Shown: positions 32,633 through 62,879 of the stretch, one piece after another
How positions within the stretch are numbered: the stretch's first letter is position 1
How the letters are laid out: every line of letters starts with the position of its first letter
IMG/VR virus record: IMGVR_UViG_3300030085_002431
Location: 62,001 to 126,000 of that record
Length of the DNA: 64,000 bases
Strand: one strand, 5' to 3'
Translations under genes and position numbers: made by a program
The notes under the pieces: generated by a model
Databases searched by the model: none
What the model was told of the DNA's origin: nothing
The model's input: only the letters and a program-made list of their open reading frames with translations

Positions 32633-33577
32633 ATGCGTGATGAATTTCTTTGGGTTGAAAAGTATCGACCCAAAACTATTGAAGATTGCATTCTCCCTGC
32701 TTCTACTAAGAAAACTTTCAAAGATTTTGTTGAACGGGGAGAAGTTCCTAACTTGTTACTTGCTGGACCTGCTGGTTGTGGCAAGACAACTGTTGCAAAA
32801 GCACTATGCCATGAACTGGGGGTAGATTATTATGTCATCAACGGATCCGATGAAGGACGTTTCCTCGATACCGTCCGAAACAATGCGAAGAATTTTGCTT
32901 CGACCGTCTCGCTTACGGCAACTGCTAAACACAAAGTCATCATCATTGATGAGGCAGATAACACAACCAATGACGTACAACTCCTCCTACGGGCATTTAC
33001 TGAGGAGTTTAGTGGCAACTGCAGATTCATCTTTACCTGCAACTACAAAAATAAAATCATCGAACCCCTCCATTCCCGTTGTGCCGTTGTGGAGTTTTCC
33101 ATCACAGGAAAGCAAAAACCAGGAATTGCTGCAAAGTTTTTCTCAAGACTTCAGTCTATCCTCACCGACGAAGGAATCAAGTTCGACAACAAAGTCCTCG
33201 TTGAACTCATCAACAAACACTTCCCAGACTGGAGAAGAGTCCTCAATGAGTGCCAAAGGTACTCGGTGGGTGGGGAGATTGATACAGGCATCCTTGCGTC
33301 CTTTGCAGAAGTAAAAACTGATGAACTTATTAAGAACCTTAAGGAAAAAAACTTTCCTGAAGTACGTAAATGGGTCGTCAGTAACCTGGACAATGATTCT
33401 GGTGTACTTCTTCGTCGTGTTTACGATGCTTGTTACGAAACCCTCGACGGTCCTAGTATTGCTGCTGCTGTTCTTATTGTTGCTAAGTATCAGTATCAAG
33501 CAGCTTTCGTAGCAGACCAAGAAATTAATCTTCTTGCAGCATTAACGGAAATTATGGTGGAGTGTAATTTTAAGTGA
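32633..33577 (+). CDS. gp44: Clamp loader large subunit gp44
   Basis: LWVEKYRP, GPAGCGKTT, IIDEAD, PLHSRC. Confidence 0.97.
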   Translation: MRDEFLWVEKYRPKTIEDCILPASTKKTFKDFVERGEVPNLLLAGPAGCGKTTVAKALCHELGVDYYVINGSDEGRFLDTVRNNAKNFASTVSLTATAKHKVIIIDEADNTTNDVQLLLRAFTEEFSGNCRFIFTCNYKNKIIEPLHSRCAVVEFSITGKQKPGIAAKFFSRLQSILTDEGIKFDNKVLVELINKHFPDWRRVLNECQRYSVGGEIDTGILASFAEVKTDELIKNLKEKNFPEVRKWVVSNLDNDSGVLLRRVYDACYETLDGPSIAAAVLIVAKYQYQAAFVADQEINLLAALTEIMVECNFK

Positions 33578-33783
33578 CAAACGAACTGTATACTACAAAT
33601 AGAAACGAACTAATGCACCAACGTCTACAGGCATGGTTACGTGAAAATAAAAGTGATGACGTTGAATACCTTGGATATTATGATGATGTTCTTGGTCAAC
33701 CGAACTATTGGTATCGCATTGGTAAATATGATGTGACTGTAGACTGTATTGAAGACATTACCCTAGCAGAAGAAAATGATTGA
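33574..33783 (+). CDS. Hypothetical protein
   Basis: 69-aa ORF translationally coupled to gp44. Confidence 0.55.
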   Translation: MTNELYTTNRNELMHQRLQAWLRENKSDDVEYLGYYDDVLGQPNYWYRIGKYDVTVDCIEDITLAEEND

Positions 33784-34069
33784 CATTAAACTTATTCGAT
33801 TGATTACTGGTGAAGAAGTAGTTGCAGAAGTTCTTGAGGATACGGGAACTACTGTTAAAGTCCAGAATGCCCTCGTAGTTATTCCTCAGAGTACTGGTGT
33901 TGGTTTTGCACCTTGGGCAACAGTTATCTCTAAGGACAATCCTGAGATTGTGTTGAAGCAAGAACATATTGTCTACATTGTAGAAGTTCAAGAAGAAGTT
34001 GCTGGTAAATACAATGAGATGTTTGGCAGTAAACTTGTTACTCCAGCAGCTAAAAAACTCGTTTTGTGA
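33776..34069 (+). CDS. Hypothetical protein (Sm-like fold candidate)
   Basis: IKLIRLITGEEVVAEV...FAPW...YNEMFGS. Confidence 0.65.
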   Translation: MIDIKLIRLITGEEVVAEVLEDTGTTVKVQNALVVIPQSTGVGFAPWATVISKDNPEIVLKQEHIVYIVEVQEEVAGKYNEMFGSKLVTPAAKKLVL

Positions 34070-34072
34070 ATT

Positions 34073-34273
34073 ATGAAAATCCCTAGACAAAAGAAATCCA
34101 GAACGTATTACTACTTCTGGTCATTTATGGCACTTACCGTGTTCTTTGGACAACTATATGTTGGATATGGATACCGTCTGATGCATGGAAGTATTCTCGA
34201 TCTACTGGATAAAGTTGATGGAGTTCTTCTACATAAAAATGAAGTTGAAGATAACCATCGCAAGTATCTATGA
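34073..34273 (+). CDS. Small single-pass membrane protein
   Basis: Hydrophobic stretch YYYFWSFMALTVFFGQLYVGYGY. Confidence 0.55.
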   Translation: MKIPRQKKSRTYYYFWSFMALTVFFGQLYVGYGYRLMHGSILDLLDKVDGVLLHKNEVEDNHRKYL

Positions 34274-34413
34274 ACTGCGAAGTAACTTTATTCAAAGCAG
34301 GTCAGGTATTTAAAGAAAAGGTTGTTGCAAGGGATTACGAGGATGCACGTAAAGTTGCTCTTGCTCGTAATCCTGGAGCAACTGTAGTAGGTGTGAACGC
34401 AGTATTTAAGTAG
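34270..34413 (+). CDS. 47-aa hypothetical protein
   Basis: Not in the track. MNCEVTLFKAGQVFKEKVVARDYEDARKVALARNPGATVVGVNAVFK fills the gap exactly, with an ATGA overlap. Confidence 0.6.
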   Translation: MNCEVTLFKAGQVFKEKVVARDYEDARKVALARNPGATVVGVNAVFK

Positions 34414-34416
34414 ATT

Positions 34417-34803
34417 ATGGGAATTGAATTGAAGGACTGGTTGAATTCCATCAACCAGACTAAAAAGAATATTATTGATGAAGACCCTTCGACAGAGAAA
34501 CAATATCCTCCATACATTGTTAATAAATGCTTGAGTGGAAGCATTGATTGTCTCATGCTAGTTAATGAGATGAATATGCATCATCAATTAGAAAAGAGAC
34601 TCCAATACGATTTCCTTATAAATACTATACGATCCAAGAAAAGATTCAATCCTTGGATAAAGAAAGAGAAAATTAAAGACCTTGAATGTGTAAAATCTTA
34701 CTATGGGTATAGTAACGAAAAAGCAGAGCAAGCTCTGAGAATTTTGTCTGATGAGCAACTTAAATTTATTAAATCTAAACTTGATATTGGAGGAACAAGA
34801 TGA
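34417..34803 (+). CDS. gp62: Clamp loader small subunit gp62
   Basis: DWLNSIN, YPPYIVNKCLS, YYGYSNEKA. Confidence 0.93.
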   Translation: MGIELKDWLNSINQTKKNIIDEDPSTEKQYPPYIVNKCLSGSIDCLMLVNEMNMHHQLEKRLQYDFLINTIRSKKRFNPWIKKEKIKDLECVKSYYGYSNEKAEQALRILSDEQLKFIKSKLDIGGTR

Positions 34804-35240
34804 GCGTCGTTCAGGAACCTGAGGTAAGATGGTCACCAGACAAAATGGTGGAAGTTATTCTCAACGAACCTGATGACTTTTTGAAAGTGAGAGAAACACT
34901 AACTAGAATTGGTGTAGCATCCCGCAAAGAAAAAAAGATTTATCAGTCATGCCATATCCTGCATAAGCAGGGTAAATATTATCTAGTACACTTCAAGGAA
35001 CTGTTTGCTCTTGATGGCAAACCAGCAAACTTAACTGTCAATGATGTTCAACGTCGTAATAGAATTACCCAACTCTTAGCAGATTGGGGTTTGATTAACG
35101 TTGTTGATGCAGAAAAAATTCAAGATATTGCACCATTGAATCAAATTAAGGTTCTCCCTTATAGGGATAAGCAAGATTGGATTCTAGAAACCAAGTATAA
35201 TATTGGCACAAAGAAAAAGAAGGTTGAGGAAACCGAATGA
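34800..35240 (+). CDS. regA: Translational repressor RegA
   Basis: DDFLKVRETLTRIG, QSCHILHKQG.YY.VHFKELF. Confidence 0.97.
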   Translation: MSVVQEPEVRWSPDKMVEVILNEPDDFLKVRETLTRIGVASRKEKKIYQSCHILHKQGKYYLVHFKELFALDGKPANLTVNDVQRRNRITQLLADWGLINVVDAEKIQDIAPLNQIKVLPYRDKQDWILETKYNIGTKKKKVEETE

Positions 35241-35246
35241 TAAGGT

Positions 35247-35270
35247 AGGGGGTTCCGAACCCCCTTTTTT
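35247..35270 (+). terminator. Intrinsic terminator after regA
   Basis: AGGGGGTT-CCG-AACCCCCT followed by a T run. Confidence 0.85.
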
Positions 35271-35280
35271 AATGTCACCA

Positions 35281-35348
35281 TATAAATAGACATGGATGCC
35301 TTCGGGGTCCACACAAAAACAAACTCGCTTAATAAAGGAGCTAGAATA
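35281..35348 (+). promoter_or_regulatory. Late promoter TATAAATA plus a structured 5' leader of hsp20
   Basis: TATAAATA at 35281, then a GGATGCC-TTCG-GGGTCC hairpin, an A/C-rich spacer and an AAGGAG RBS. Confidence 0.6.
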
Positions 35349-35783
35349 ATGGGTAACCTCCAACGATGGAGTGCAGCAGACCTGCCTGCGCTCATGGAAA
35401 GAATCAACCGAAATAGTATCGGGATGGATGAGTACTTTGACCGTCTTTTTCACCTACATGAAAGTACCTCAAACTATCCGCCATATAACCTAGTGCAAGT
35501 TAATAATGTAGAGTCTAGACTTGAATTAGCACTAGCTGGATTCAAAAAAGAAGAAGTCAATGTCTACACGGAATACGGTAAACTCTTTATTGAAGGCAAG
35601 AAAGAGGATAAAGAAACACAGTCTTCATACGTCCACAAAGGTTTGGCTCAACGGTCGTTTACACGAACCTGGACTCTCAGTGACGACACGGAAATTGGAT
35701 CAGTTAATTTTGAAAATGGGCTTTTAGAGATTGTCCTTAAAAAAGTAGTACCAGATCATCATGCTCGTAAAGATTGGTTTTGA
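35349..35783 (+). CDS. hsp20: Small heat shock protein Hsp20 (IbpA-like)
   Basis: YPPYNL, ELALAGF, HKGLAQRSFTR, NGLLEI; ATG at 35349 follows AAGGAG. Confidence 0.95.
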   Translation: MGNLQRWSAADLPALMERINRNSIGMDEYFDRLFHLHESTSNYPPYNLVQVNNVESRLELALAGFKKEEVNVYTEYGKLFIEGKKEDKETQSSYVHKGLAQRSFTRTWTLSDDTEIGSVNFENGLLEIVLKKVVPDHHARKDWF

Positions 35784-35823
35784 TTTCATAACAGTCTCTT
35801 TATAATTTAGTCACCGATGCTAC

Positions 35824-35850
35824 AAAAGTGTATCAACGTGATACACTTTT
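35824..35850. promoter_or_regulatory. Perfect 12-bp inverted repeat (operator or AT-rich terminator) upstream of a -10 box
   Basis: AAAAGTGTATCA-ACG-TGATACACTTTT; TATAAT at 35856-35861. Confidence 0.55.
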
Positions 35851-35882
35851 TGCTATATAATATGTACTTTGGAGGACGACTT

Positions 35883-35966
35883 ATGAATCTCACAGCCGCC
35901 ACTCTTACAATTGGGACCGCAATGACTCTTTTTTTCAACGGGTTCCTTGGGGGCGCATTCCCCTAA
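35883..35966 (+). CDS. 27-aa hydrophobic micropeptide
   Basis: GGAGG RBS; MNLTAATLTIGTAMTLFFNGFLGGAFP. Confidence 0.5.
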   Translation: MNLTAATLTIGTAMTLFFNGFLGGAFP

Positions 35967-36008
35967 TAGTCCACCCAGTATAGAGTCCTTTTACTTTACA
36001 ACTCCATA

Positions 36009-36119
36009 ATGGCAATTTTCGCAACTATCGCATTTATTGGTTCAGCAATTTTCGGAGCATATCAACTAACACCCAAAACAGCAAAAGTAACTGTTGATGA
36101 CGAGTTACTTCCTTATTGA
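36009..36119 (+). CDS. 36-aa single-pass membrane micropeptide
   Basis: MAIFATIAFIGSAIFGAYQLTPKTAKVTVDDELLPY. Confidence 0.45.
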   Translation: MAIFATIAFIGSAIFGAYQLTPKTAKVTVDDELLPY

Positions 36120-36120
36120 A

Positions 36121-36189
36121 TAAATAAAACTGAATATCGTCGCCGCAGGGGACCGACTGGCAAAATCCAGTTGAATCCCCTCTTTTTTT
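36121..36189 (+). ncRNA. Candidate late small RNA (about 55-60 nt) ending in a terminator hairpin
   Basis: TAAATA at 36121, no ORF, GC-rich 5' segment ATATCGTCGCCGC, stem AGGGGA..CGACTGG/CCAGTTG..TCCCCT, then T7. Confidence 0.4.
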
Positions 36190-36199
36190 GTATTATAAT
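36171..36199 (+). promoter_or_regulatory. Sigma70-type promoter for ndhD, overlapping the terminator
   Basis: TTGAAT-N17-TATAAT, 15 nt before the ndhD ATG. Confidence 0.65.
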
Positions 36200-36214
36200 A
36201 GTTAGTGAAACTTT

Positions 36215-37774
36215 ATGAACCATACTATGCCTTGGTTGAGTTTATCTATTCTAGTTCCTATCGTTGCTGCTTTATTCATCCCCTTCATTCCAGATAAAGG
36301 TGATGGAAAGGTTGTCAGATGGTATGGACTATCGACTACATTAGTTACATTTTTAATTACTGTAGCAGCATATCTAACTGGATACGACCCAAGTGTAAGT
36401 GGTCTCCAGATGGTAGAGAAGGTTTCTTGGATTCCCTCACTGGGTCTGCAGTGGTCTGTGGGGGCAGATGGACTGTCTATGCCACTAATCCTTCTAACTA
36501 GTTTTATCACTAGTCTTGCTGCCCTTGCCGCATGGCCTCTACGATTCAAACCTAAACTATTTTACTTCCTTCTTTTGTTGATGGATGGTGGGCAGATTAT
36601 GGTTTTTGCGGTACAGGATTTGATTCTTTTCTTCCTGTCATGGGAACTAGAACTTGTTCCTGTTTACATGATGCTCTCTATTTGGGGAGGAAAGAAACGT
36701 CAATATGCTGCTACAAAGTTTATTATTTACACAGCAGGTAGTTCTTTGTTTATTCTTCTGGCAGGACTTGCCATGGGATTCTGGGCATCTAATGGTGCTC
36801 CAAACTTTGACTACACATATCTAATGCAGCAGGGATTCCCAAAGAGTTTTCAACTTTGGTGTTATGCTGGATTCTTAATTGCCTTTGGTGTAAAACTCCC
36901 TATTGTTCCATTACATACATGGTTACCTGATGCACACGGGGAAGCAACTGCGCCAGTCCATATGCTTCTGGCAGGTATCCTTCTGAAGATGGGTGGATAT
37001 GCACTGCTGCGATTTAACTGTCAACTTCTTCCAGAAGCACATACAGTATTTGCACCTATCTTGATTGTCCTTGGTGCTGTGAATATCATTTATGCAGCAT
37101 TGACATCATTTGCACAACGCAACCTCAAACGCAAGATTGCATATAGTTCTATCAGTCACATGGGATTTGTACTTATCGGTATTGGGAGTTATAGTGCTCT
37201 TGGAACCAGTGGTGCTATGCTCCAGATGGTAAGTCACGGTTTGATTGGTGCATCTCTGTTCTTCCTGGTGGGTGCAACCTATGACAGGACCCATACTCTT
37301 GAACTTGCTGAGATGGGTGGTGTGGGCAAGAGTATGAAGATTATGTTTGCAATGTGGGTTGTCTGTACAATGGCATCTTTGGCACTTCCAGGAATGAGTG
37401 GATTTGCAAGTGAACTGATGGTCTTCACTGGATTTGCAACTGACACAATGTATAGTGTGCCGTTCCGTGTATTCATTTGTATTCTTTCTGCCATTGGTGT
37501 TATTCTTACACCCATTTATTTGCTATCGATGCTTCGTGAGATATTCTTTGGCAAAGAGAATAAGGAACTTGTCAATCATACAAACCTAGTTGATGCAGAA
37601 CCAAGGGAAATATATATTATTAGTTGTCTTCTTGTTCCTATCATCGGACTTGGAGTGTTCCCAAGAATTATGACTGATACATATCAGAGTTCTATCGAAG
37701 CACTAGTTGAAAGAGATAAGGCACCATTGGTAAGACCCCATCTAGTTAGAATGTATACACCCCCAACAGTATGA
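36215..37774 (+). CDS. ndhD: NAD(P)H-quinone oxidoreductase (NDH-1) subunit 4, cyanobacterial NdhD1/D2-type
   Basis: Multi-TM protein. [84 protein letters not shown]. Confidence 0.96.
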
Positions 37775-38316
37775 ACCTAGATATTTGTGATAAGATAGCA
37801 GAAAAACTTATATTAGAAACTAATACTAGTAAACGCACATCTTTCTTTAAAGGTGACCACAATGTATATTCTATGAGTATTGCATTTACAAAAGATGGAA
37901 TTGAAGAATTGCTAGAAAATTATGGTTACTTAAAACCTTTTATTGATGAAGCTGTTGATACTGATACTTACAATGTTTTTTGGTTAAATTCATTGATAAT
38001 TGGAAACGGGGAAGAGATACAACGACATAGAGATGCTACAATAAGTAGATATACTAAAGTTCCCATCTTGGCAGATAGAGTAACTGTACTTTATGTAAAA
38101 GTTCCTAGTGATATGATTGGTGGAGAACTTAAAATATATCATTATCGTCGTATAGAAACAGTAACACCAGAGAAGGGGAAAATGGTAATTTTTAAAAATC
38201 AAACTCATTCTATTGATGAAGTTACTACAGATAGTGAGAGAATTAGTTTAGTTCTTGAGAGTTACTATCTTGATGAAATAGACTTTCCTAAAATACCCAA
38301 GTATGATAAAGAATAA
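37771..38316 (+). CDS. 2OG-Fe(II) oxygenase-like protein
   Basis: HRD (HxD), VTVLYV, GGEL, P.KGKMVIF...H, RISLV. Confidence 0.7.
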
Positions 38317-38320
38317 ATCT

Positions 38321-38359
38321 AAGGGGAGGTTTGACACCTCCCTTTTTTATTGCTAAAAT
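38321..38359 (+). promoter_or_regulatory. Fused terminator hairpin and sigma70 promoter
   Basis: AGGGGAGGT-TTGAC-ACCTCCC.. hairpin plus T run; TTGACA(38331)-N17-TAAAAT(38354). Confidence 0.8.
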
Positions 38360-38381
38360 TCTAAGAGGAAACGAGTGGTTT

Positions 38382-38711
38382 ATGGCTGTTAAACTTGCTG
38401 TATTGAAGTCTGGTGAAGACGTAGTTGCCGACATTAAAGAACTCTGTGACGAGCAGGATAATGTTGTAGCACTAGTGTTTAGTAACCCTGTTGTTGTGAA
38501 GTTGATTACTAATCAGACTTTACTTGAAAGTGAAAATGCTGATGAATATAAAGTAGCATTTTATCCTTGGCAACCACTCTCGGCGGAAAGAGATATTCCT
38601 GTTCGGTCTGACTGGATTGTTAGTATTTCTGAACCTATTGAACTTGTAAAAACATCTTATCAGGAGAAAATGAATGGAAGAAACAGCACTGATGGTAGCA
38701 GTCCTGAATAG
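38382..38711 (+). CDS. Conserved hypothetical protein (Sm-like fold candidate)
   Basis: VKLAVLKSGEDVVADIKE...FYPW.PLS; ATG at 38382. Confidence 0.7.
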   Translation: MAVKLAVLKSGEDVVADIKELCDEQDNVVALVFSNPVVVKLITNQTLLESENADEYKVAFYPWQPLSAERDIPVRSDWIVSISEPIELVKTSYQEKMNGRNSTDGSSPE

Positions 38712-38934
38712 TGGAATTGCTCTGATTACTGAGATTGAAGAAGTTGCTGCTTCAATTCCTGGTGAACCAGATTGTAAATTTATAAATCCCTTTGAAATAA
38801 AGGGTGACACCCTGGTTCCTTGGTTGTATGATTACACTGACGAACGCACCGTCATGATTAGTTCTGACAGGATTCTTACTCTTGTAGAACCAAAGAAAAC
38901 ATTCCTTGAAAAGTACAAAGACCTTACGAAATGA
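38674..38934 (+). CDS. Conserved hypothetical protein upstream of gp43
   Basis: IPGEPDCK.INP...PWL...SSDRILTLVEP. Confidence 0.7.
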   Translation: MEETALMVAVLNSGIALITEIEEVAASIPGEPDCKFINPFEIKGDTLVPWLYDYTDERTVMISSDRILTLVEPKKTFLEKYKDLTK

Positions 38935-41435
38935 GATTCTATACCAACGTCTACGAAAAGTTCAATAAGATTCTAGTTCGTGGTTATGACAACGGTAGAT
39001 ACTTTCAGACAGAGGAGGATTTTAATCCTACATTCTTCGTCACTTCAAAGAAAAAGACACAGTATAAAACTTTAGATGGAACTGTGGTTGAACCGATTCA
39101 ACCTGGTTCCATTTCTGATTGTAGGGAATTTATCAAGAAGTATTCAGAGGTTGAGGGATTTGCTGTATTTGGCAATGATAACTTCAAGGCACAGTATATC
39201 TCTGAGAAATATCCAGAGGACGAAATTAAGTTTGATATTAACAAAATCAGACTGTTTACGATTGACATTGAGGTCTCTGCAGAAAACGGATTCCCTAATG
39301 TATTTGAATGTGCAGAAGAACTTCTGACTATCACACTTCAAAACTATGCTACTAAGCAGATTATCTGTTTTGCAAATAACCGTGACTACGAGAATACTCG
39401 TAAGGATGTCATGTATGTGAAATGTGATAGTGAACAGGACATGGCACTGAAGTTCTTGGCATTCTGGGAGCAGAATACTCCTGATGCAATCACTGGATGG
39501 AACTGTGAACTGTATGATATTCCATACATTGCTGGAAGGTTTGAACGTATTCTTGGAACAAAAGACACCCGTCGTCTTTCTCCATGGAAGAATGTTCGAC
39601 GTAAAGAATTTGTGATTCAGGGACGTGAACAAATCTCTTATGAGATTGCTGGTGTTTCTGTTATTGATTATCTTGACCTCTATAAGAAGTTTACTTACAA
39701 GGCACAAGAATCATATCGATTGGACCACATCGCATTTGTGGAACTTGGACAGAAGAAGTTGGACCACTCTGAGTTTGATACCTTTAAGGACTTCTATACA
39801 AAGGACTGGCAGAAGTTTGTTGACTACAACATCAAAGACGTTGAACTTGTTGACCGTCTGGAAGACAAGATGAAACTCATTGAACTCTGTATGACTATGG
39901 CATACGATGCGAAGATTAACTATAATGATGTTTTCTTCCAGGTACGTACATGGGATGCAATTATCTACAATTATCTGAAGAAAAGGAATATCGTAATTCC
40001 TCCAAAAGATAGGAGTGAGAAGAATGAGAAGTATGCAGGTGCGTATGTTAAGGAACCGATTCCTGGGGTATATGATTGGGTTGTCAGTTTTGACCTCAAT
40101 AGCCTGTACCCTCACCTTATTATGCAGTACAATATCTCACCAGAGACACTCCAGGATTCGAGGCATCCCTCAGCAACAGTTGATAAGATACTTAATCAAC
40201 AGGTGACATTTGAGATGTATAAGGACAGTGCGGTTTGTGCTAATGGAGCAATGTATCGCAAGGATGTCCGTGGATTCCTACCTGAACTGATGGAGAAGAT
40301 GTATGGGGACAGAGTTGTATTCAAGAAACGAATGCTTGAAGCAAAGCAGCAGTACGAGAAGACTCCTACTAAAGCACTTGAGAAAGAAATCGCACGTTGT
40401 AACAACATTCAAATGGCGAAGAAGATTTCTCTTAACTCTGCTTATGGNNNNNNNNNNATTGGTAATCAATACTTCAGGTATTACAAACTAGCAAACGCAG
40501 AAGCAATTACTTATTCTGGTCAGGTATCAATCCGTTGGATTGAAAATAAAATGAATAAGTATCTAAATAGATTGTTGAAAACAAGTGATGTCGATTATGT
40601 TATTGCTTCTGATACTGATAGTATCTACCTTAACATGGGTCCTTTGGTCGAAATTGTATACAAGGGAAGAGAAAAAACTAATGAAAAGGTTGTCAATTTC
40701 CTTGACAAGATCTGTAAAATGGAACTTGAGCCTTATATTGAAAGTTCTTACCAAGAACTGGCGGACTATGTGAACGCATACGACCAAAAGATGCAGATGA
40801 AACGGGAAAACATTGCCAACCGTGGAATTTGGACAGCAAAGAAACGATACATCCTTAATGTATGGGATAGTGAAGGTGTTCGATACGAAGAACCTAAACT
40901 AAAAATCATGGGCATTGAAGCAGTAAAGTCTTCAACTCCTGCTCCATGCCGTAAGATGATTAAGGATGGACTCAAAATTGCTATGACTAAGACAGAAGAT
41001 GAGTTGATTGATTTTATTGAAGAGTCGAGAAAGCAATTTAATCAATATGGACCTGAGGAAATTTCTTTTCCTAGGACAGCATCTGATGTCATGAAGCATA
41101 AAGCACATGCAACAATCTACGGAAAGGGAACACCAATCCATGTAAGAGGTGCATTGCTTTATAATCACATGATTAAAGAAAGGGGATTGGATAAGAAGTA
41201 TGCTTCTATTCAGAATGGTGAGAAAATTAAGTTCTGCTATTTGAAACTTCCAAATCCTATTCGTGAGAATGTTATATCTTTCATCTCTGATTTCCCTGTG
41301 GAACTCGGACTAGACAAATATATCGACTATGACCTACAATTCTCAAAGGCATTCCTTGATCCCATGAAGGTCGTTTTGGATGCAATTGGTTGGAAAGTCG
41401 AACGAACCGTTACCCTAGAATCATTTTTTTCCTAA
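38931..41435 (+). CDS. gp43: Family B DNA polymerase gp43 (spans an assembly gap)
   Basis: DIE exonuclease motif, SFDLNSLYP, KKISLNSAYG, SDTDS, KKRY; Ns at 40448-40457. Confidence 0.97.
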   Translation: MRFYTNVYEKFNKILVRGYDNGRYFQTEEDFNPTFFVTSKKKTQYKTLDGTVVEPIQPGSISDCREFIKKYSEVEGFAVFGNDNFKAQYISEKYPEDEIKFDINKIRLFTIDIEVSAENGFPNVFECAEELLTITLQNYATKQIICFANNRDYENTRKDVMYVKCDSEQDMALKFLAFWEQNTPDAITGWNCELYDIPYIAGRFERILGTKDTRRLSPWKNVRRKEFVIQGREQISYEIAGVSVIDYLDLYKKFTYKAQESYRLDHIAFVELGQKKLDHSEFDTFKDFYTKDWQKFVDYNIKDVELVDRLEDKMKLIELCMTMAYDAKINYNDVFFQVRTWDAIIYNYLKKRNIVIPPKDRSEKNEKYAGAYVKEPIPGVYDWVVSFDLNSLYPHLIMQYNISPETLQDSRHPSATVDKILNQQVTFEMYKDSAVCANGAMYRKDVRGFLPELMEKMYGDRVVFKKRMLEAKQQYEKTPTKALEKEIARCNNIQMAKKISLNSAYXXXXIGNQYFRYYKLANAEAITYSGQVSIRWIENKMNKYLNRLLKTSDVDYVIASDTDSIYLNMGPLVEIVYKGREKTNEKVVNFLDKICKMELEPYIESSYQELADYVNAYDQKMQMKRENIANRGIWTAKKRYILNVWDSEGVRYEEPKLKIMGIEAVKSSTPAPCRKMIKDGLKIAMTKTEDELIDFIEESRKQFNQYGPEEISFPRTASDVMKHKAHATIYGKGTPIHVRGALLYNHMIKERGLDKKYASIQNGEKIKFCYLKLPNPIRENVISFISDFPVELGLDKYIDYDLQFSKAFLDPMKVVLDAIGWKVERTVTLESFFS
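40448..40457. other. Scaffold gap (10 N)
   Basis: Run of N inside polymerase motif B. Confidence 0.95.
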
Positions 41436-41605
41436 TGGAACTCCCTATCAACGATAAAGAATTGAACACTATTGTAAGTGCTTTGCGTCTTGGTGGAGAT
41501 ACATCTTTGTATCAGAAATTGAAGACTATCAAGGAAATTCGTGAAAATAATCCTGGTGGTGCCTATAAAAAAGTTGCCCGTGAACAATTTGGTTTTGTGC
41601 TATGA
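41435..41605 (+). CDS. Small conserved hypothetical protein
   Basis: MELPINDKELNTIVSALRLGGDTSLYQKL; TAATG overlap. Confidence 0.6.
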   Translation: MELPINDKELNTIVSALRLGGDTSLYQKLKTIKEIRENNPGGAYKKVAREQFGFVL

Positions 41606-42237
41606 CGTTTGAGGAAGATACATGGTATACAATAATTCCCAGCAATGTGAATTTATACAAGTGTGAACTTGGTCCTACTGCTGTAGGATATCTTTGGGAT
41701 AGGGTGAAGCAAGCAACTGAAAATCCACGTTCTTTTAAACAAACTCTTGCTGGTAATATCAATGAGAGTTTGATTTTAGTTGATAAGGGTAATTATTTTT
41801 TTAAAAATCATTTAGAGTATGCTGCTCATAAGTACATACAAGATAATGGACACAGAGCAATACAACATGTTAAAGATAACAAACTGAAACTAGAATCTTT
41901 TTGGGTAAACTTTCAAAATAAGCACGACTTTAATCCAGTTCATTATCATATTGGAATATTATCATTTGTTATTTGGATGAAAATTCCGACAAGACACAAA
42001 GAGCAGTATAGTCTTCCAATTTCTGCTAACTCAAACAATCCATGTGCTTCTGATTTTGAGTTTTTATACACTAATATTCTTGGTGATATTGAACGAATGG
42101 ATGTTAAGATGGATCCAGAAGTTGAAGGAACTATGTTTATTTTTCCTTCATCTCTAACGCATCAAGTGTATCCATTTTATAATACGGATGATCAAAGAAT
42201 ATCTATATCTGGAAATATTGCTATCGATGAGGAGTAA
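41602..42237 (+). CDS. 2OG-Fe(II) oxygenase-like protein
   Basis: WVNFQ...[32 protein letters not shown]. Confidence 0.8.
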
Positions 42238-62843: not shown

Positions 62844-62879
62844 GGCACCCTTGACAGGGTGCTTTTTTATGCCTAAAAT
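62844..62879 (+). promoter_or_regulatory. Fused terminator hairpin and sigma70 promoter
   Basis: GGCACCC-TTGACA-GGGTGCT plus a T run; TTGACA(62851)-N17-TAAAAT(62874). Confidence 0.8.

What the first reader, a model, noticed from the sequence alone, without database searches (positions are those of the whole stretch)
36215..37774. Full-length phage ndhD with its own early-type promoter
Seen: an intact 519-aa NdhD with the conserved Glu/Lys motifs (WELE, VKLP, LLKMG), inserted between hsp20 and gp43 and preceded by TTGAAT-N17-TATAAT. Known: NdhD is the exchangeable subunit that specifies NDH-1 type; D1/D2 serve respiration and cyclic electron flow, D3/D4 serve CO2 uptake. Viral ndh genes have been reported from marine metagenomes but are not standard cyanophage core genes. 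Inference: supplying this one subunit early could bias host NDH-1 toward ATP-generating complexes.
Basis: partly seen in the sequence, partly recalled or inferred. Interest (0 to 1): 0.6.

Follow-up and report, generated by a model that had tools for sequence, protein, structure and literature searches.

The report
Cyanophage-encoded NdhD1 subunit gene
A large marine cyanophage carries an intact, strongly conserved copy of the host's NdhD1 subunit of the NDH-1 proton pump, plus the small partner subunit NdhP. Phage ndhD genes have already been published, so this is a good example of a known kind and not a new one.

Summary
The ORF is real: 36215..37774, + strand, 519 aa. All 45 other phage copies start at the second in-frame ATG (36227), which gives 515 aa.

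- **Identity.** It is an NdhD1-type NDH-1 subunit. It scores 948.6 bits on NCBIfam NF002713 (cut-off 827), 759 bits against T. elongatus NdhD1 and 299 bits against NdhD3. The proton-channel Glu, Lys and His residues are all kept.
- **Setting.** It lies in a 250.6-kb T4-like cyanomyovirus, in the gap between hsp20 and gp43.
- **Distribution.** The same gene sits at that locus in about 50 IMG/VR contigs and in isolate S-SCSM2R, and at another locus in S-8S53 and S-8S56.
- **Evolution.** The phage copies group together (SH-aLRT 81). They are 77-80% identical to the nearest cell proteins and have dN/dS of 0.04-0.09.
- **Promoter.** TTGAAT-N17-TATAAT exists, but the match alone is no better than chance. 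The real support is comparative: 36 of 37 distinct upstream regions keep a hairpin, a T-run and a -10 box about 23 nt before the ATG. The -35 is not conserved and lies inside the terminator stem. Early timing is not shown.
- **Partner gene.** The genome also encodes NdhP, which is specific to NDH-1L, as do the other five ndhD phage genomes or contigs tested.
- **Most likely role.** It supplies NDH-1L parts to sustain ATP-generating electron flow during infection.

Phage ndhD was reported in 2011 (metagenomes) and 2025 (isolate). Its function is still untested.

The parts
36227..37774 (+). ndhD coding sequence, NdhD1-type NDH-1 subunit 4. It is 515 aa from the conserved start; an in-frame ATG at 36215 would give 519 aa.
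   Evidence: ORF. NCBIfam NF002713 scores 948.6 bits against a cut-off of 827. Pfam PF00361. PDB 6hum_D (NdhD1) scores 759 bits against 299 bits for 6tjv_D (NdhD3). The conserved MPWL start is shown.
36147..36189 (+). Intrinsic-terminator-like hairpin (36147-36181) plus a T7 run (36183-36189). It ends the upstream small-ORF unit.
   Evidence: Folds at -19 kcal/mol, z = -2.6. A hairpin and T-run are kept in 34-36 of 37 distinct upstream regions, with non-homologous stems in different groups.
36171..36199 (+). Sigma-70-type promoter-like site: TTGAAT (36171-36176), 17-nt spacer, TATAAT (36194-36199).
   Evidence: The -10 box is conserved 21-28 nt (mode 23) before the ATG in 36 of 37 relatives, 33 of them with an extended TGn. 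The -35 is not conserved and overlaps the hairpin arm.
37771..38316 (+). 2OG-Fe(II) oxygenase gene. Its ATG overlaps the ndhD stop (ATGA), so it is probably co-transcribed with ndhD.
   Evidence: Pfam PF13640. Overlap seen. GC 30% and GC3 17%, against 38% for the genome. Present only in the window lineage and L019.
38321..38359 (+). Second terminator-promoter module: hairpin 38321-38345 with TTGACA in the loop, then a T-run, then TGcTAAAAT. It closes the ndhD-2OG unit and opens the DUF6561-DUF6561-gp43 unit.
35883..35966 (+). Context: gene for a 27-aa hydrophobic peptide, with a GGAGGA ribosome-binding site and its own hairpin, T5 and TATAAT (35828-35861). It is conserved beside ndhD in many phages.
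   Evidence: Sequence. Conservation (listed as orf49). Deep metatranscriptome contigs cover 35861-35968. No family or PDB match.
36009..36119 (+). Context: ORF for a 36-aa protein with a hydrophobic N-terminal stretch (possible single membrane span), directly upstream of the ndhD terminator/promoter.
   Evidence: 46-61% identity in L032 and L034-36. No family or PDB match.
35292..35783 (+). hsp20, the upstream core neighbour. Its likely true start is 35349.
   Evidence: PHROG 432 and Pfam PF00011. AAGGAG ribosome-binding site before ATG 35349 and TATAAATA at 35281-35288. An RNA contig covers 35294-35835.
38931..41435 (+). gp43 DNA polymerase, the downstream core neighbour.
   Evidence: ORF. 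68-71% identity to the gp43 of other ndhD-carrying contigs.

Best explanation
This is a virus-encoded orthologue of the cyanobacterial NdhD1 subunit, the NuoM-like proton-pumping antiporter subunit that, together with NdhF1, defines the NDH-1L complex. It appears to have entered T4-like cyanomyoviruses once from a picocyanobacterium, and it has since been kept under strong purifying selection as a self-contained cassette: hairpin and T-run terminator, sigma-70-type -10 box, a U-rich leader of about 16-20 nt, then ndhD.

During infection, host RNA polymerase would transcribe it in the pre-late (early or middle) phase. The protein would insert into the thylakoid membrane and dock onto host NdhB and NdhF1, held in place by the phage's own NdhP, which is encoded 30 kb away next to gnd. 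This would maintain or raise the pool of NDH-1L, so that electrons from ferredoxin keep flowing to plastoquinone and protons keep being pumped. That means cyclic flow in the light and oxidation of pentose-phosphate reductant otherwise, and it makes ATP for phage replication while carbon fixation is shut down.

- **Shown here:** gene identity, D1 type, phage context, conservation, selection, and co-occurrence with ndhP.
- **Inferred:** transcription timing, membrane assembly, and the effect on electron flow.
For: **D1 identity**
- NF002713 scores 948.6 bits against a cut-off of 827. The host's second paralogue instead fits NF009212, and D3/D4-type proteins fit NF005060.
- 759 bits to T. elongatus NdhD1 against 299 bits to NdhD3.

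**Catalytic residues**
- E144 (WELE), K227 (VKLP), K258, H315 and E400 are kept. The last three correspond to the NdhD1 Lys254, His311 and Glu396 named in PMC6358722, exactly so in 515-aa numbering.
- 281 of 338 host-invariant columns are kept in at least 97% of phage copies, and the changes are mostly conservative.

**Selection and age**
- dN/dS is 0.04-0.09 across ten phage pairs, with dS of 0.5-1.6.
- GC3 is 33%, like the phage genome.

**Single phage group**
- All 18 representatives form one group (SH-aLRT 81), including the copies at a different locus.

**Phage context**
- The genome is 250.6 kb and CheckV rates it 100% complete.
- The order regA-hsp20-ndhD-DUF6561-gp43 recurs in about 50 contigs.

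**Partner subunit**
- NdhP is at G000:C1:128495-128626, with E = 3.6e-8 to the PDB NdhP chain.
- NdhP is present in all 6 ndhD-carrying phage genomes or contigs examined (the window's own plus five others).
- NdhP is exclusive to NDH-1L, contacts only NdhD1 and stabilises the NdhD1-NdhB link (PMC4131877, PMC11794437).
- Complex prediction for phage NdhD with phage NdhP scored ipSAE 0.80, with a best control of 0.00. That mark was reached by 51 of 78 solved complexes and 2 of 108 mismatched pairs. The runs agreed in at least 94% of contacts and the partner pLDDT was at least 77. The pass may come from the model's memory of solved NDH-1L.

**Promoter**
- The conserved -10 module is of the same design as the one before the gp43 operon.

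**Metabolic context**
- The genome has gnd next to ndhP and a PTOX-family oxidase and psbA/psbD elsewhere, but no PSI genes.
- Cyanomyoviruses lack alt, mod, motA and asiA, so sigma-70-type promoters are read by unmodified host polymerase (PMC2984593).
Against: - There is no direct evidence of expression. In four RNA libraries from four studies, contigs at 95% identity or more covered hsp20 and the small-peptide gene. They did not cover the ndhD body, except for a few mismatched pieces in one library.
- The phage does not supply NdhF1, which is also needed for NDH-1L. A gain in complex number would therefore require spare host NdhF1 and NDH-1M cores.
- Phage NdhD lacks about 20-30 residues of the (variable) host C-terminal tail. 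The effect of this is unknown.
- The only physiological study of a phage that carries ndhD measured PSII parameters only, and found photosynthesis at or slightly below the control level (PMC12801897).
- The complex prediction can pass from memory of solved NDH-1L structures.
Confidence: 0.6

Rival explanations
1. Re-specification. Excess phage NdhD1 and NdhP out-compete NdhD4/NdhF4/CupB-type modules for the shared NDH-1M core. This switches the host from CO2-uptake complexes to NDH-1L and so helps shut down carbon concentration and fixation as well as making ATP.
For: The variable D/F modules share one NDH-1M core, and the NdhB-NdhD joint is the weak point (PMC11794437). Synechococcus-type hosts do carry D3/D4-type paralogues (L148 and L149 at 36-38% identity). 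The phage supplies both proteins that sit at the NdhD1-NdhB joint.
Against: The Prochlorococcus genome checked had only the two D1/D2-type paralogues and no D3/D4-type match, so this cannot be the general role in such hosts. NdhF1 is not supplied. Nothing here measures complex ratios. This rival overlaps with the best explanation and does not exclude it.
Confidence: 0.2
2. Interference. The phage protein is a poison or decoy subunit, or a free proton leak, that disables host NDH-1 or depolarises the membrane instead of sustaining it.
For: It has a shorter C-terminal tail than host NdhD1, a long stem branch (0.55) leading to the phage group, and a few host-invariant positions that vary in phages.
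Against: All proton-channel residues and 83% of host-invariant columns are kept, and dN/dS is 0.04-0.09. It co-occurs with the stabilising subunit NdhP and has a confident predicted interface with it. A decoy would not need an intact proton channel.
Confidence: 0.05
3. Artefact. The gene is a host fragment mis-assembled into a viral contig, or a recent passenger with no function.
For: None, beyond the general risk in metagenome assemblies.
Against: An independent 8.7-kb IMG/VR contig carries the identical gene with the same flanks (L005). In all, 57 viral contigs and three cultured phages carry it. The nearest cell protein is 80% identical. Base composition matches the phage. Purifying selection is strong.
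Confidence: 0.01

Closest known systems
NdhD of Synechococcus phage S-SCSM2R (PQ898602, ORF157; BMC Biol 2025, PMC12801897)
   Same: 86% amino-acid identity. Same locus order: regA, sHsp, small ORFs, NdhD, two DUF6561 genes, gp43. A genome of about 245-250 kb that also carries ndhP next to gnd.
   Different: gp43 is only 68% identical, so this is a different lineage. S-SCSM2R has a 76-aa ORF between the conserved element and ndhD, and a different hairpin directly before ndhD. It has no 2OG oxygenase fused behind ndhD. The window has a better -35 but lacks the extended TGn.
NdhD of Kanaloavirus phages S-8S53 and S-8S56 (OQ504982, OQ504984)
   Same: 82% identity and the same phage NdhD group. 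They have the same hairpin, T-run and TGn -10 design upstream, and they also carry ndhP.
   Different: Genomes of 176-177 kb. ndhD lies at another locus, between the psbD/2OG/glutaredoxin region and thyX.
Cellular NdhD1 of marine and freshwater picocyanobacteria, and T. elongatus NdhD1 (PDB 6HUM, 6KHI and others)
   Same: 77-80% identity to picocyanobacterial NdhD1. 759 bits to T. elongatus NdhD1. Same NCBIfam model and the same proton-channel residues.
   Different: The phage proteins form their own group on a long stem. They are 503-520 aa against 523-564 aa for host proteins, because of a shorter C-terminal tail. They have phage-like base composition.
Phage psbA, psbD and PSI gene cassettes (for example P-TIM68), the paradigm of photosynthetic auxiliary genes
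   Same: A host-derived membrane subunit of the electron-transport chain, carried by T4-like cyanophages and thought to sustain ATP supply. P-TIM68 enhances cyclic flow (PMC6359870).
   Different: The target is a different complex, NDH-1L rather than PSII or PSI. This genome has psbA and psbD but no psaA or psaB. There are no functional data for ndhD.

Membership tests
NdhD1-type NDH-1 subunit 4 (NCBIfam NF002713 / PRK02546) | Whole-protein score above the curated cut-off, and better than the paralogue models | tested here: met
   948.6 bits against a cut-off of 827. NF009212 scores 752.7 bits. The host orthologue scores 1009 bits on NF002713, the host second paralogue 886 bits on NF009212, and a D3/D4-type protein 690 bits on NF005060.
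NdhD1-type NDH-1 subunit 4 | Closer to a structurally defined NdhD1 than to NdhD3 | tested here: met
   6hum_D (chain 4 1) scores 759 bits against 299 bits for 6tjv_D (NdhD3). The host second paralogue reaches only 559 bits against 6hum_D.
NdhD1-type NDH-1 subunit 4 | Antiporter-like proton channel residues: TM5 Glu, TM7 Lys, central TM8 Lys, bridging His, TM12 Glu | tested here: met
   E144, K227, K258, H315/H341 and E400 are present. K258, H315 and E400 correspond to Lys254, His311 and Glu396 of NdhD1 in PMC6358722.
NdhD1-type NDH-1 subunit 4 | Binds NdhP, the subunit specific to NDH-1L | tested here: inconclusive
   ipSAE 0.80 against a best control of 0.00. The mark was reached by 51 of 78 solved complexes and 2 of 108 mismatched pairs. 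The result may reflect memory of solved NDH-1L.
NdhD1-type NDH-1 subunit 4 | Assembles with NdhB and NdhF1 into NDH-1L and supports respiration and cyclic flow | not testable with these tools
   This needs BN-PAGE with mass spectrometry and P700 kinetics. A lysine that probably corresponds to the NdhF1 salt-bridge partner (window K168) is invariant, but the mapping to Synechocystis K166 is inferred.
NdhD3/NdhD4 (CO2-uptake NDH-1MS types) | Best match to D3/D4 models or structures | tested here: not met
   NF005060 scores 395.6 bits against a cut-off of 747. Identity to host D3/D4-type paralogues is 36-38%.
Cyanophage auxiliary metabolic gene | Sits in a bona fide phage genome between phage core genes, in independent assemblies | tested here: met
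   gp62, regA, hsp20 and gp43 flank it. It occurs in 57 IMG/VR loci and 3 isolates.
Cyanophage auxiliary metabolic gene | The phage copies form a lineage distinct from hosts and are under purifying selection | tested here: met
   Phage copies form one group, SH-aLRT 81. dN/dS is 0.04-0.09.
Cyanophage auxiliary metabolic gene | Expressed during infection | tested here: inconclusive
   RNA-library contigs cover the neighbours but barely cover ndhD, and contigs cannot show absence.
Sigma-70-type (early/middle) promoter of T4-like cyanophages | -35 and -10 hexamers with 16-18 nt spacing | tested here: met
   TTGAAT-17-TATAAT matches 10 of 12 positions, but such sites are not enriched over shuffles.
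Sigma-70-type (early/middle) promoter of T4-like cyanophages | Conserved in position among relatives | tested here: met
   The -10 box is kept in 36 of 37 distinct upstream regions, 21-28 nt before the ATG, and 33 of them have TGn. The -35 is not conserved.
Sigma-70-type (early/middle) promoter of T4-like cyanophages | Mapped transcription start and early kinetics | not testable with these tools
   Only contigs of RNA libraries were available, and none starts at ndhD. No time-course data exist for any phage that carries ndhD.

The most novel reading that the evidence does not exclude
Cyanomyoviruses carry a two-part 'NDH-1L kit'. NdhP alone is present, mostly unannotated, in many isolates beside zwf and gnd. 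NdhP together with NdhD1 is present in a subset. Together the two proteins rebuild or lock the fragile NdhD1-NdhB joint, so that reductant from the phage-boosted pentose-phosphate pathway is converted into proton-motive force. Where the host has CO2-uptake NDH-1 complexes, the shared NDH-1M cores would be diverted away from them. The conserved small membrane peptides next to ndhD (27 aa and 36 aa) could be further virus-specific accessory subunits that play the part of NdhQ.
Probability: 0.2. Interest if true: 0.7.

Novelty: new member of a known kind. Interest (0 to 1): 0.38.

Why it matters
NDH-1L is the main route of cyclic and respiratory electron flow in picocyanobacteria, so a virus that supplies its type-defining subunit could change the ATP/NADPH balance of infected cells across large parts of the surface ocean.

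The gene class is already published, so the value of this work lies in four sharper statements:
- The phage gene is specifically the D1 orthologue.
- All phage copies look like one old acquisition that has been kept under strong constraint.
- Every ndhD-carrying phage genome or contig tested also has NdhP, and NdhP is more widespread in cyanophages than the literature says.
- The gene travels as a cassette with its own terminator and -10 promoter.

Because S-SCSM2R, S-8S53 and S-8S56 are in culture, the function can now be tested directly.

Tried and rejected
- PHROGs has no family for this protein. That reflects the age of the library, not novelty.
- A strict genome-wide pattern for the terminator-promoter module was too narrow. 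A relaxed pattern was used instead.
- tblastn of the 44-aa NdhP against the phage collection found nothing. The low-complexity filter on a short hydrophobic query is the likely cause. blastn did find it in 20 records.
- The two small peptides next to ndhD were tested as possible NdhQ, NdhP or photosystem subunits. There was no match in PDB at E up to 10, in Pfam or in NCBIfam. Those libraries also miss the real NdhP, so the blank is weak evidence.
- Rfam on 33000-42000 gave only a chance-level ROSE_3 hit in the hsp20 leader (E = 0.97). Folding does not show a sequestered ribosome-binding site, so the RNA-thermometer idea was dropped.
- RNA libraries: no contig shows ndhD transcribed or its 5' end. 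This neither supports nor refutes expression.
- Host contamination or a chimeric assembly was rejected.
- D3/D4 type was rejected.
- The position of the phage group relative to the marine Synechococcus/Prochlorococcus group and the Cyanobium group is an unresolved three-way fork. No donor lineage is claimed.
- Doron 2016 and Sharon 2011 are not held in the library. Statements about them rest on secondary citations (PMC10452541, PMC2984593) or on my own knowledge.
- The exact equivalent of Synechocystis NdhD1 Lys166 could not be mapped without that sequence. Window K168 is my inference.
Full report
**1. Observation**

The + strand carries an open frame at 36215..37774 of 519 aa. Upstream, the sequence reads TTGAAT (36171-36176), 17 nt, then TATAAT (36194-36199), followed 15 nt later by the first ATG.

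Two corrections are needed. First, every other phage NdhD (45 sequences) begins at MPWL, which is residue 5 here. In the closest relatives the stretch homologous to the window's first ATG is untranslated leader. The likely start is therefore ATG 36227, giving 515 aa. In that numbering the central Lys, bridging His and TM12 Glu fall exactly on Lys254, His311 and Glu396, the positions given for NdhD1 in PMC6358722. Second, ndhD is not directly flanked by hsp20 and gp43. The local order is:
- gp62 clamp-loader subunit (34417)
- regA (34800)
- hsp20 (35292)
- a small-peptide gene (35883)
- a 36-aa ORF (36009)
- ndhD
- a 2OG-Fe(II) oxygenase, whose ATG overlaps the ndhD stop (37771)
- two DUF6561 genes
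- gp43 (38931)

**2. What the protein is**

[quoted passage not shown] Pfam finds the Proton_antipo_M domain.

Against solved structures the best match is T. elongatus NdhD1 (6hum_D, 759 bits). NdhD3 of the CO2-uptake complex (6tjv_D) scores only 299 bits.

Picocyanobacterial genomes hold up to three classes of paralogue:

| Class | Identity to the phage protein | Best NCBIfam model | Notes |
|---|---|---|---|
| NdhD1 orthologue | 78-79% | NF002713 | The phage protein fits this model |
| Second D1/D2-type paralogue | 54% | NF009212 | 559 bits to NdhD1 |
| D3/D4-type | 36-38% | NF005060 | Seen in Synechococcus WH 5701 |

The phage gene is therefore the NdhD1 orthologue.

**3. It is a phage gene**

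The window is part of a 250,613-bp IMG/VR virus record that CheckV rates 100% complete. An independent 8.7-kb viral contig (L005) carries the identical gene with the same neighbours. In all, 57 IMG/VR loci encode a relative at 73-100% identity.

Three cultured phages also carry the gene:
- S-SCSM2R, 86% amino-acid identity
- S-8S56, 82%
- S-8S53, 82%

In about 50 of the viral loci and in S-SCSM2R the gene lies in the same gap: regA, hsp20, small ORFs, ndhD, two DUF6561 genes, gp43. Three loci have the order regA-ndhD-hsp20. The Kanaloavirus isolates and L042 have it near thyX. Relatives without ndhD show hsp20 followed directly by the DUF6561-gp43 unit, so ndhD is a presence/absence difference at this site.

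The nearest cell proteins are only 77-80% identical.

**4. Evolution**

I built a maximum-likelihood tree of 88 representatives, rooted on the 54% paralogue. All 18 phage representatives fall on one side of a branch (SH-aLRT 81, stem length 0.55), including the copies at the other genomic locus. This group, the marine Synechococcus/Prochlorococcus group and the Cyanobium/freshwater group meet in an unresolved fork. I read this as one old acquisition from a picocyanobacterium, followed by spread among phages. The donor is not resolved, and 'one acquisition' is an inference.

- dN/dS among phage copies is 0.04-0.09 at dS of 0.5-1.6.
- ndhD has 41.7% GC and 33% GC3. The phage genome has 38.2% GC, and host ndhD has 38-65% GC.
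- Of 338 columns that are at least 97% invariant in 135 cell sequences, 281 are equally invariant in the 46 phage sequences. Only three show a near-fixed difference, and all three are conservative: L to M, L to I and R to K.
- Phage proteins are 503-520 aa and host proteins 523-564 aa. The difference is a shorter, variable C-terminal tail.

**5. The promoter claim**

As a bare match the hexamers are not significant. The 5.5-kb region has 22 promoter-like sites against 17.4 +/- 4.3 in shuffles. TTGAAT also lies in the descending arm of a hairpin (36147-36181, -19 kcal/mol, z = -2.6) that is followed by T7. That makes it a textbook intrinsic terminator for the upstream unit.

The comparative picture is much stronger. 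Among 37 distinct upstream regions of phage ndhD:
- 36 keep a T-run followed within 1-6 nt by TAnAAT (TATATA in the Kanaloavirus copies). The 37th (L039) has a hairpin and TGcTATAAT behind only three T's.
- 33 have an extended TGn.
- The -10 box ends 21-28 nt (mode 23) before the conserved ATG.
- 34 have a hairpin of -8 kcal/mol or better just before the T-run.

The hairpins fall into about a dozen sequence types that do not resemble each other. The structure has therefore been kept while the sequence was replaced. The window itself lacks the TGn but has the best -35 of the set.

The most common hairpin type is a conserved element found in 29 viral contigs:
- In relatives that lack ndhD, it sits between hsp20 and the DUF6561-gp43 unit.
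- In some phages that carry ndhD, it lies after ndhD instead of before it.

The same design recurs in this genome: a hairpin, often with TTGAC(A) in its loop, then a T-run and a -10 box. It is found before the first DUF6561 gene (38321-38359) and at a few other sites.

So ndhD does have its own sigma-70-type promoter, insulated from upstream transcription. That promoter belongs to the class that also drives the DNA-polymerase operon. By contrast, hsp20 is preceded by a T4-late-type TATAAATA box (35281-35288).

Cyanomyoviruses lack alt, modA/B, motA and asiA, so such promoters are thought to be read by unmodified host polymerase (PMC2984593). 'Early-type' is thus reasonable as a promoter class, but the timing was not measured.

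In four RNA libraries from four studies, contigs at 95% identity or more cover hsp20 (35294-35835, with no mismatch in one run) and, at high depth, the small-peptide gene (35861-35968). The ndhD body appears only as three mismatched pieces in one library, whose record calls it a viral metagenome. Expression of this ndhD is therefore not shown, and contigs cannot show absence.

**6. A partner gene outside the window**

The same genome encodes a 44-aa NdhP at G000:C1:128495-128626. This is 2.5 kb beyond the window's end, and its start overlaps the end of gnd. It is 80% identical to S-SCSM2R NdhP and matches the NdhP chain of solved NDH-1L at E = 3.6e-8. All five other ndhD-carrying phage genomes or contigs tested also have it, including the Kanaloaviruses.

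NdhP-like genes also occur in isolates that lack ndhD, often beside zwf or gnd and mostly labelled hypothetical. Examples are P-TIM40, S-SSM4, S-SSM6b, S-WAM2, S-RIM4, S-RIM32, metaG-MbCM1, S-SZBM1 and Sf-CH1b. ndhP is therefore commoner than the S-SCSM2R paper states, and ndhD carriers look like a subset of ndhP carriers.

NdhP is found only in NDH-1L (PMC4131877). It contacts only NdhD1 and, with NdhQ, stabilises the NdhD1-NdhB joint (PMC11794437).

A complex prediction of phage NdhD with phage NdhP gave these figures:
- ipSAE 0.80, with a best control of 0.00.
- The mark was reached by 51 of 78 solved complexes and 2 of 108 mismatched pairs.
- The runs agreed in at least 94% of contacts, and the partner pLDDT was at least 77.

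Because NDH-1L structures are solved, the pass shows likeness to the known interface. It does not show that these copies bind.

**7. Mechanism**

The best-supported reading has four steps. The phage makes NdhD1 and NdhP from sigma-70-type promoters before the late phase. These join host NdhB and NdhF1 on NDH-1M cores. NDH-1L is thereby maintained or increased. Ferredoxin-to-plastoquinone electron flow with proton pumping continues, and ATP is made for replication.

The rest of the genome fits this reading. It has gnd next to ndhP, a PTOX-family oxidase, psbA and psbD, but no PSI genes. Identity, type, conservation and linkage to ndhP are shown. Expression, assembly and effect are inferred.

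It cannot be general, because the Prochlorococcus genome checked has no D3/D4-type paralogue. A poison-subunit role is unlikely given the intact proton channel and the strong constraint.

**8. Comparison with what is known, and novelty**

- Viral ndhD was inferred from marine metagenomes in 2011 (cited in PMC10452541).
- It was reported in an isolate in 2025. The S-SCSM2R paper calls it the first report in a cyanophage genome (PMC12801897).
- The 2023 GenBank records of S-8S53 and S-8S56 already annotate it.
- The S-SCSM2R study measured only PSII parameters, so no function has been shown.

The window's gene is a new member of this known kind, in a distinct lineage of large cyanomyoviruses (gp43 is 68% identical to that of S-SCSM2R). 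What this analysis adds is the D1 assignment, the single phage group under strong constraint, the constant pairing with ndhP, and the conserved terminator-promoter cassette.

**9. Verdict**

Interest is moderate to low because the gene class is published, although the open functional question can now be tested in cultured phages.

Noticed in passing
window 35828-35968: A small gene for a 27-aa hydrophobic peptide (ATG 35883, GGAGGA ribosome-binding site). It has its own hairpin, T5 and TATAAT module (35828-35861). It is the most deeply covered stretch in the metatranscriptome contigs (35861-35968) and is conserved beside ndhD in many phages. No family or PDB match; function unknown.
   Followed up: partly
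window 36009-36119: ORF for a 36-aa protein with a hydrophobic N-terminal stretch (possible single membrane span), just upstream of the ndhD terminator/promoter. It is conserved at 46-61% identity in a few ndhD contigs (L032, L034-36) and in L156, which lacks ndhD. No family or PDB match. An NdhQ-like role was considered but has no support.
   Followed up: partly
window 35281-35360: The true start of hsp20 is probably ATG 35349, which has an AAGGAG site 8 nt upstream and is where the PHROG match begins (residue 20). A T4-late-type TATAAATA box lies at 35281-35288, and an RNA contig begins at 35294. The leader's 5' hairpin is also conserved in L028, L030 and L040. A weak ROSE_3 (RNA thermometer) hit, E = 0.97, was not supported by folding.
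   Followed up: partly
window 37771-38316: The 2OG-Fe(II) oxygenase gene overlaps the ndhD stop. Its composition is very atypical (GC 30%, GC3 17%, against 38% for the genome). It is found behind ndhD only in this lineage and in L019 (48% identity), so it looks like a more recent insertion.
   Followed up: partly
window 36132-36189; L150-L174: A noncoding element of about 60 nt (a conserved leader, a long hairpin with a CAAAAT loop, then T7) is conserved at nucleotide level in 29 IMG/VR contigs whose coding genes are saturated at synonymous sites. It lies 5' of ndhD, 3' of ndhD, or between hsp20 and DUF6561 in phages that lack ndhD. A late-promoter-like ATAAATA often precedes it (36123-36129 here). 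It may be more than a terminator.
   Followed up: partly
G000:C1:128495-128629 (outside the window; L143:4495-4629): ndhP overlaps the end of gnd. NdhP-like genes are present but unannotated or mislabelled in at least nine cultured cyanophages that lack ndhD, usually beside zwf or gnd. This contradicts the published statement that ndhP was previously known only from P-TIM68.
   Followed up: partly
G000:C1:163609-164465 (outside the window): psbD matches the Photo_RC family in two separate pieces (163609-163821 and 163857-164465). This could mean an intron, a frameshift or a masked stretch.
   Followed up: no
window about 40440-40460 (inside gp43): A short run of N (read as XXXX in the translation) interrupts the gp43 reading frame. 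It is presumably a masked or withheld stretch and not a real gap.
   Followed up: no
window 62863-62879; genome 168222-168237 and 213606-213619: Further modules of the same design (hairpin with TTGAC(A) in its loop, T-run, then a -10 box) occur at a handful of sites in the genome. This suggests a recurrent dual terminator/promoter architecture in this phage.
   Followed up: partly
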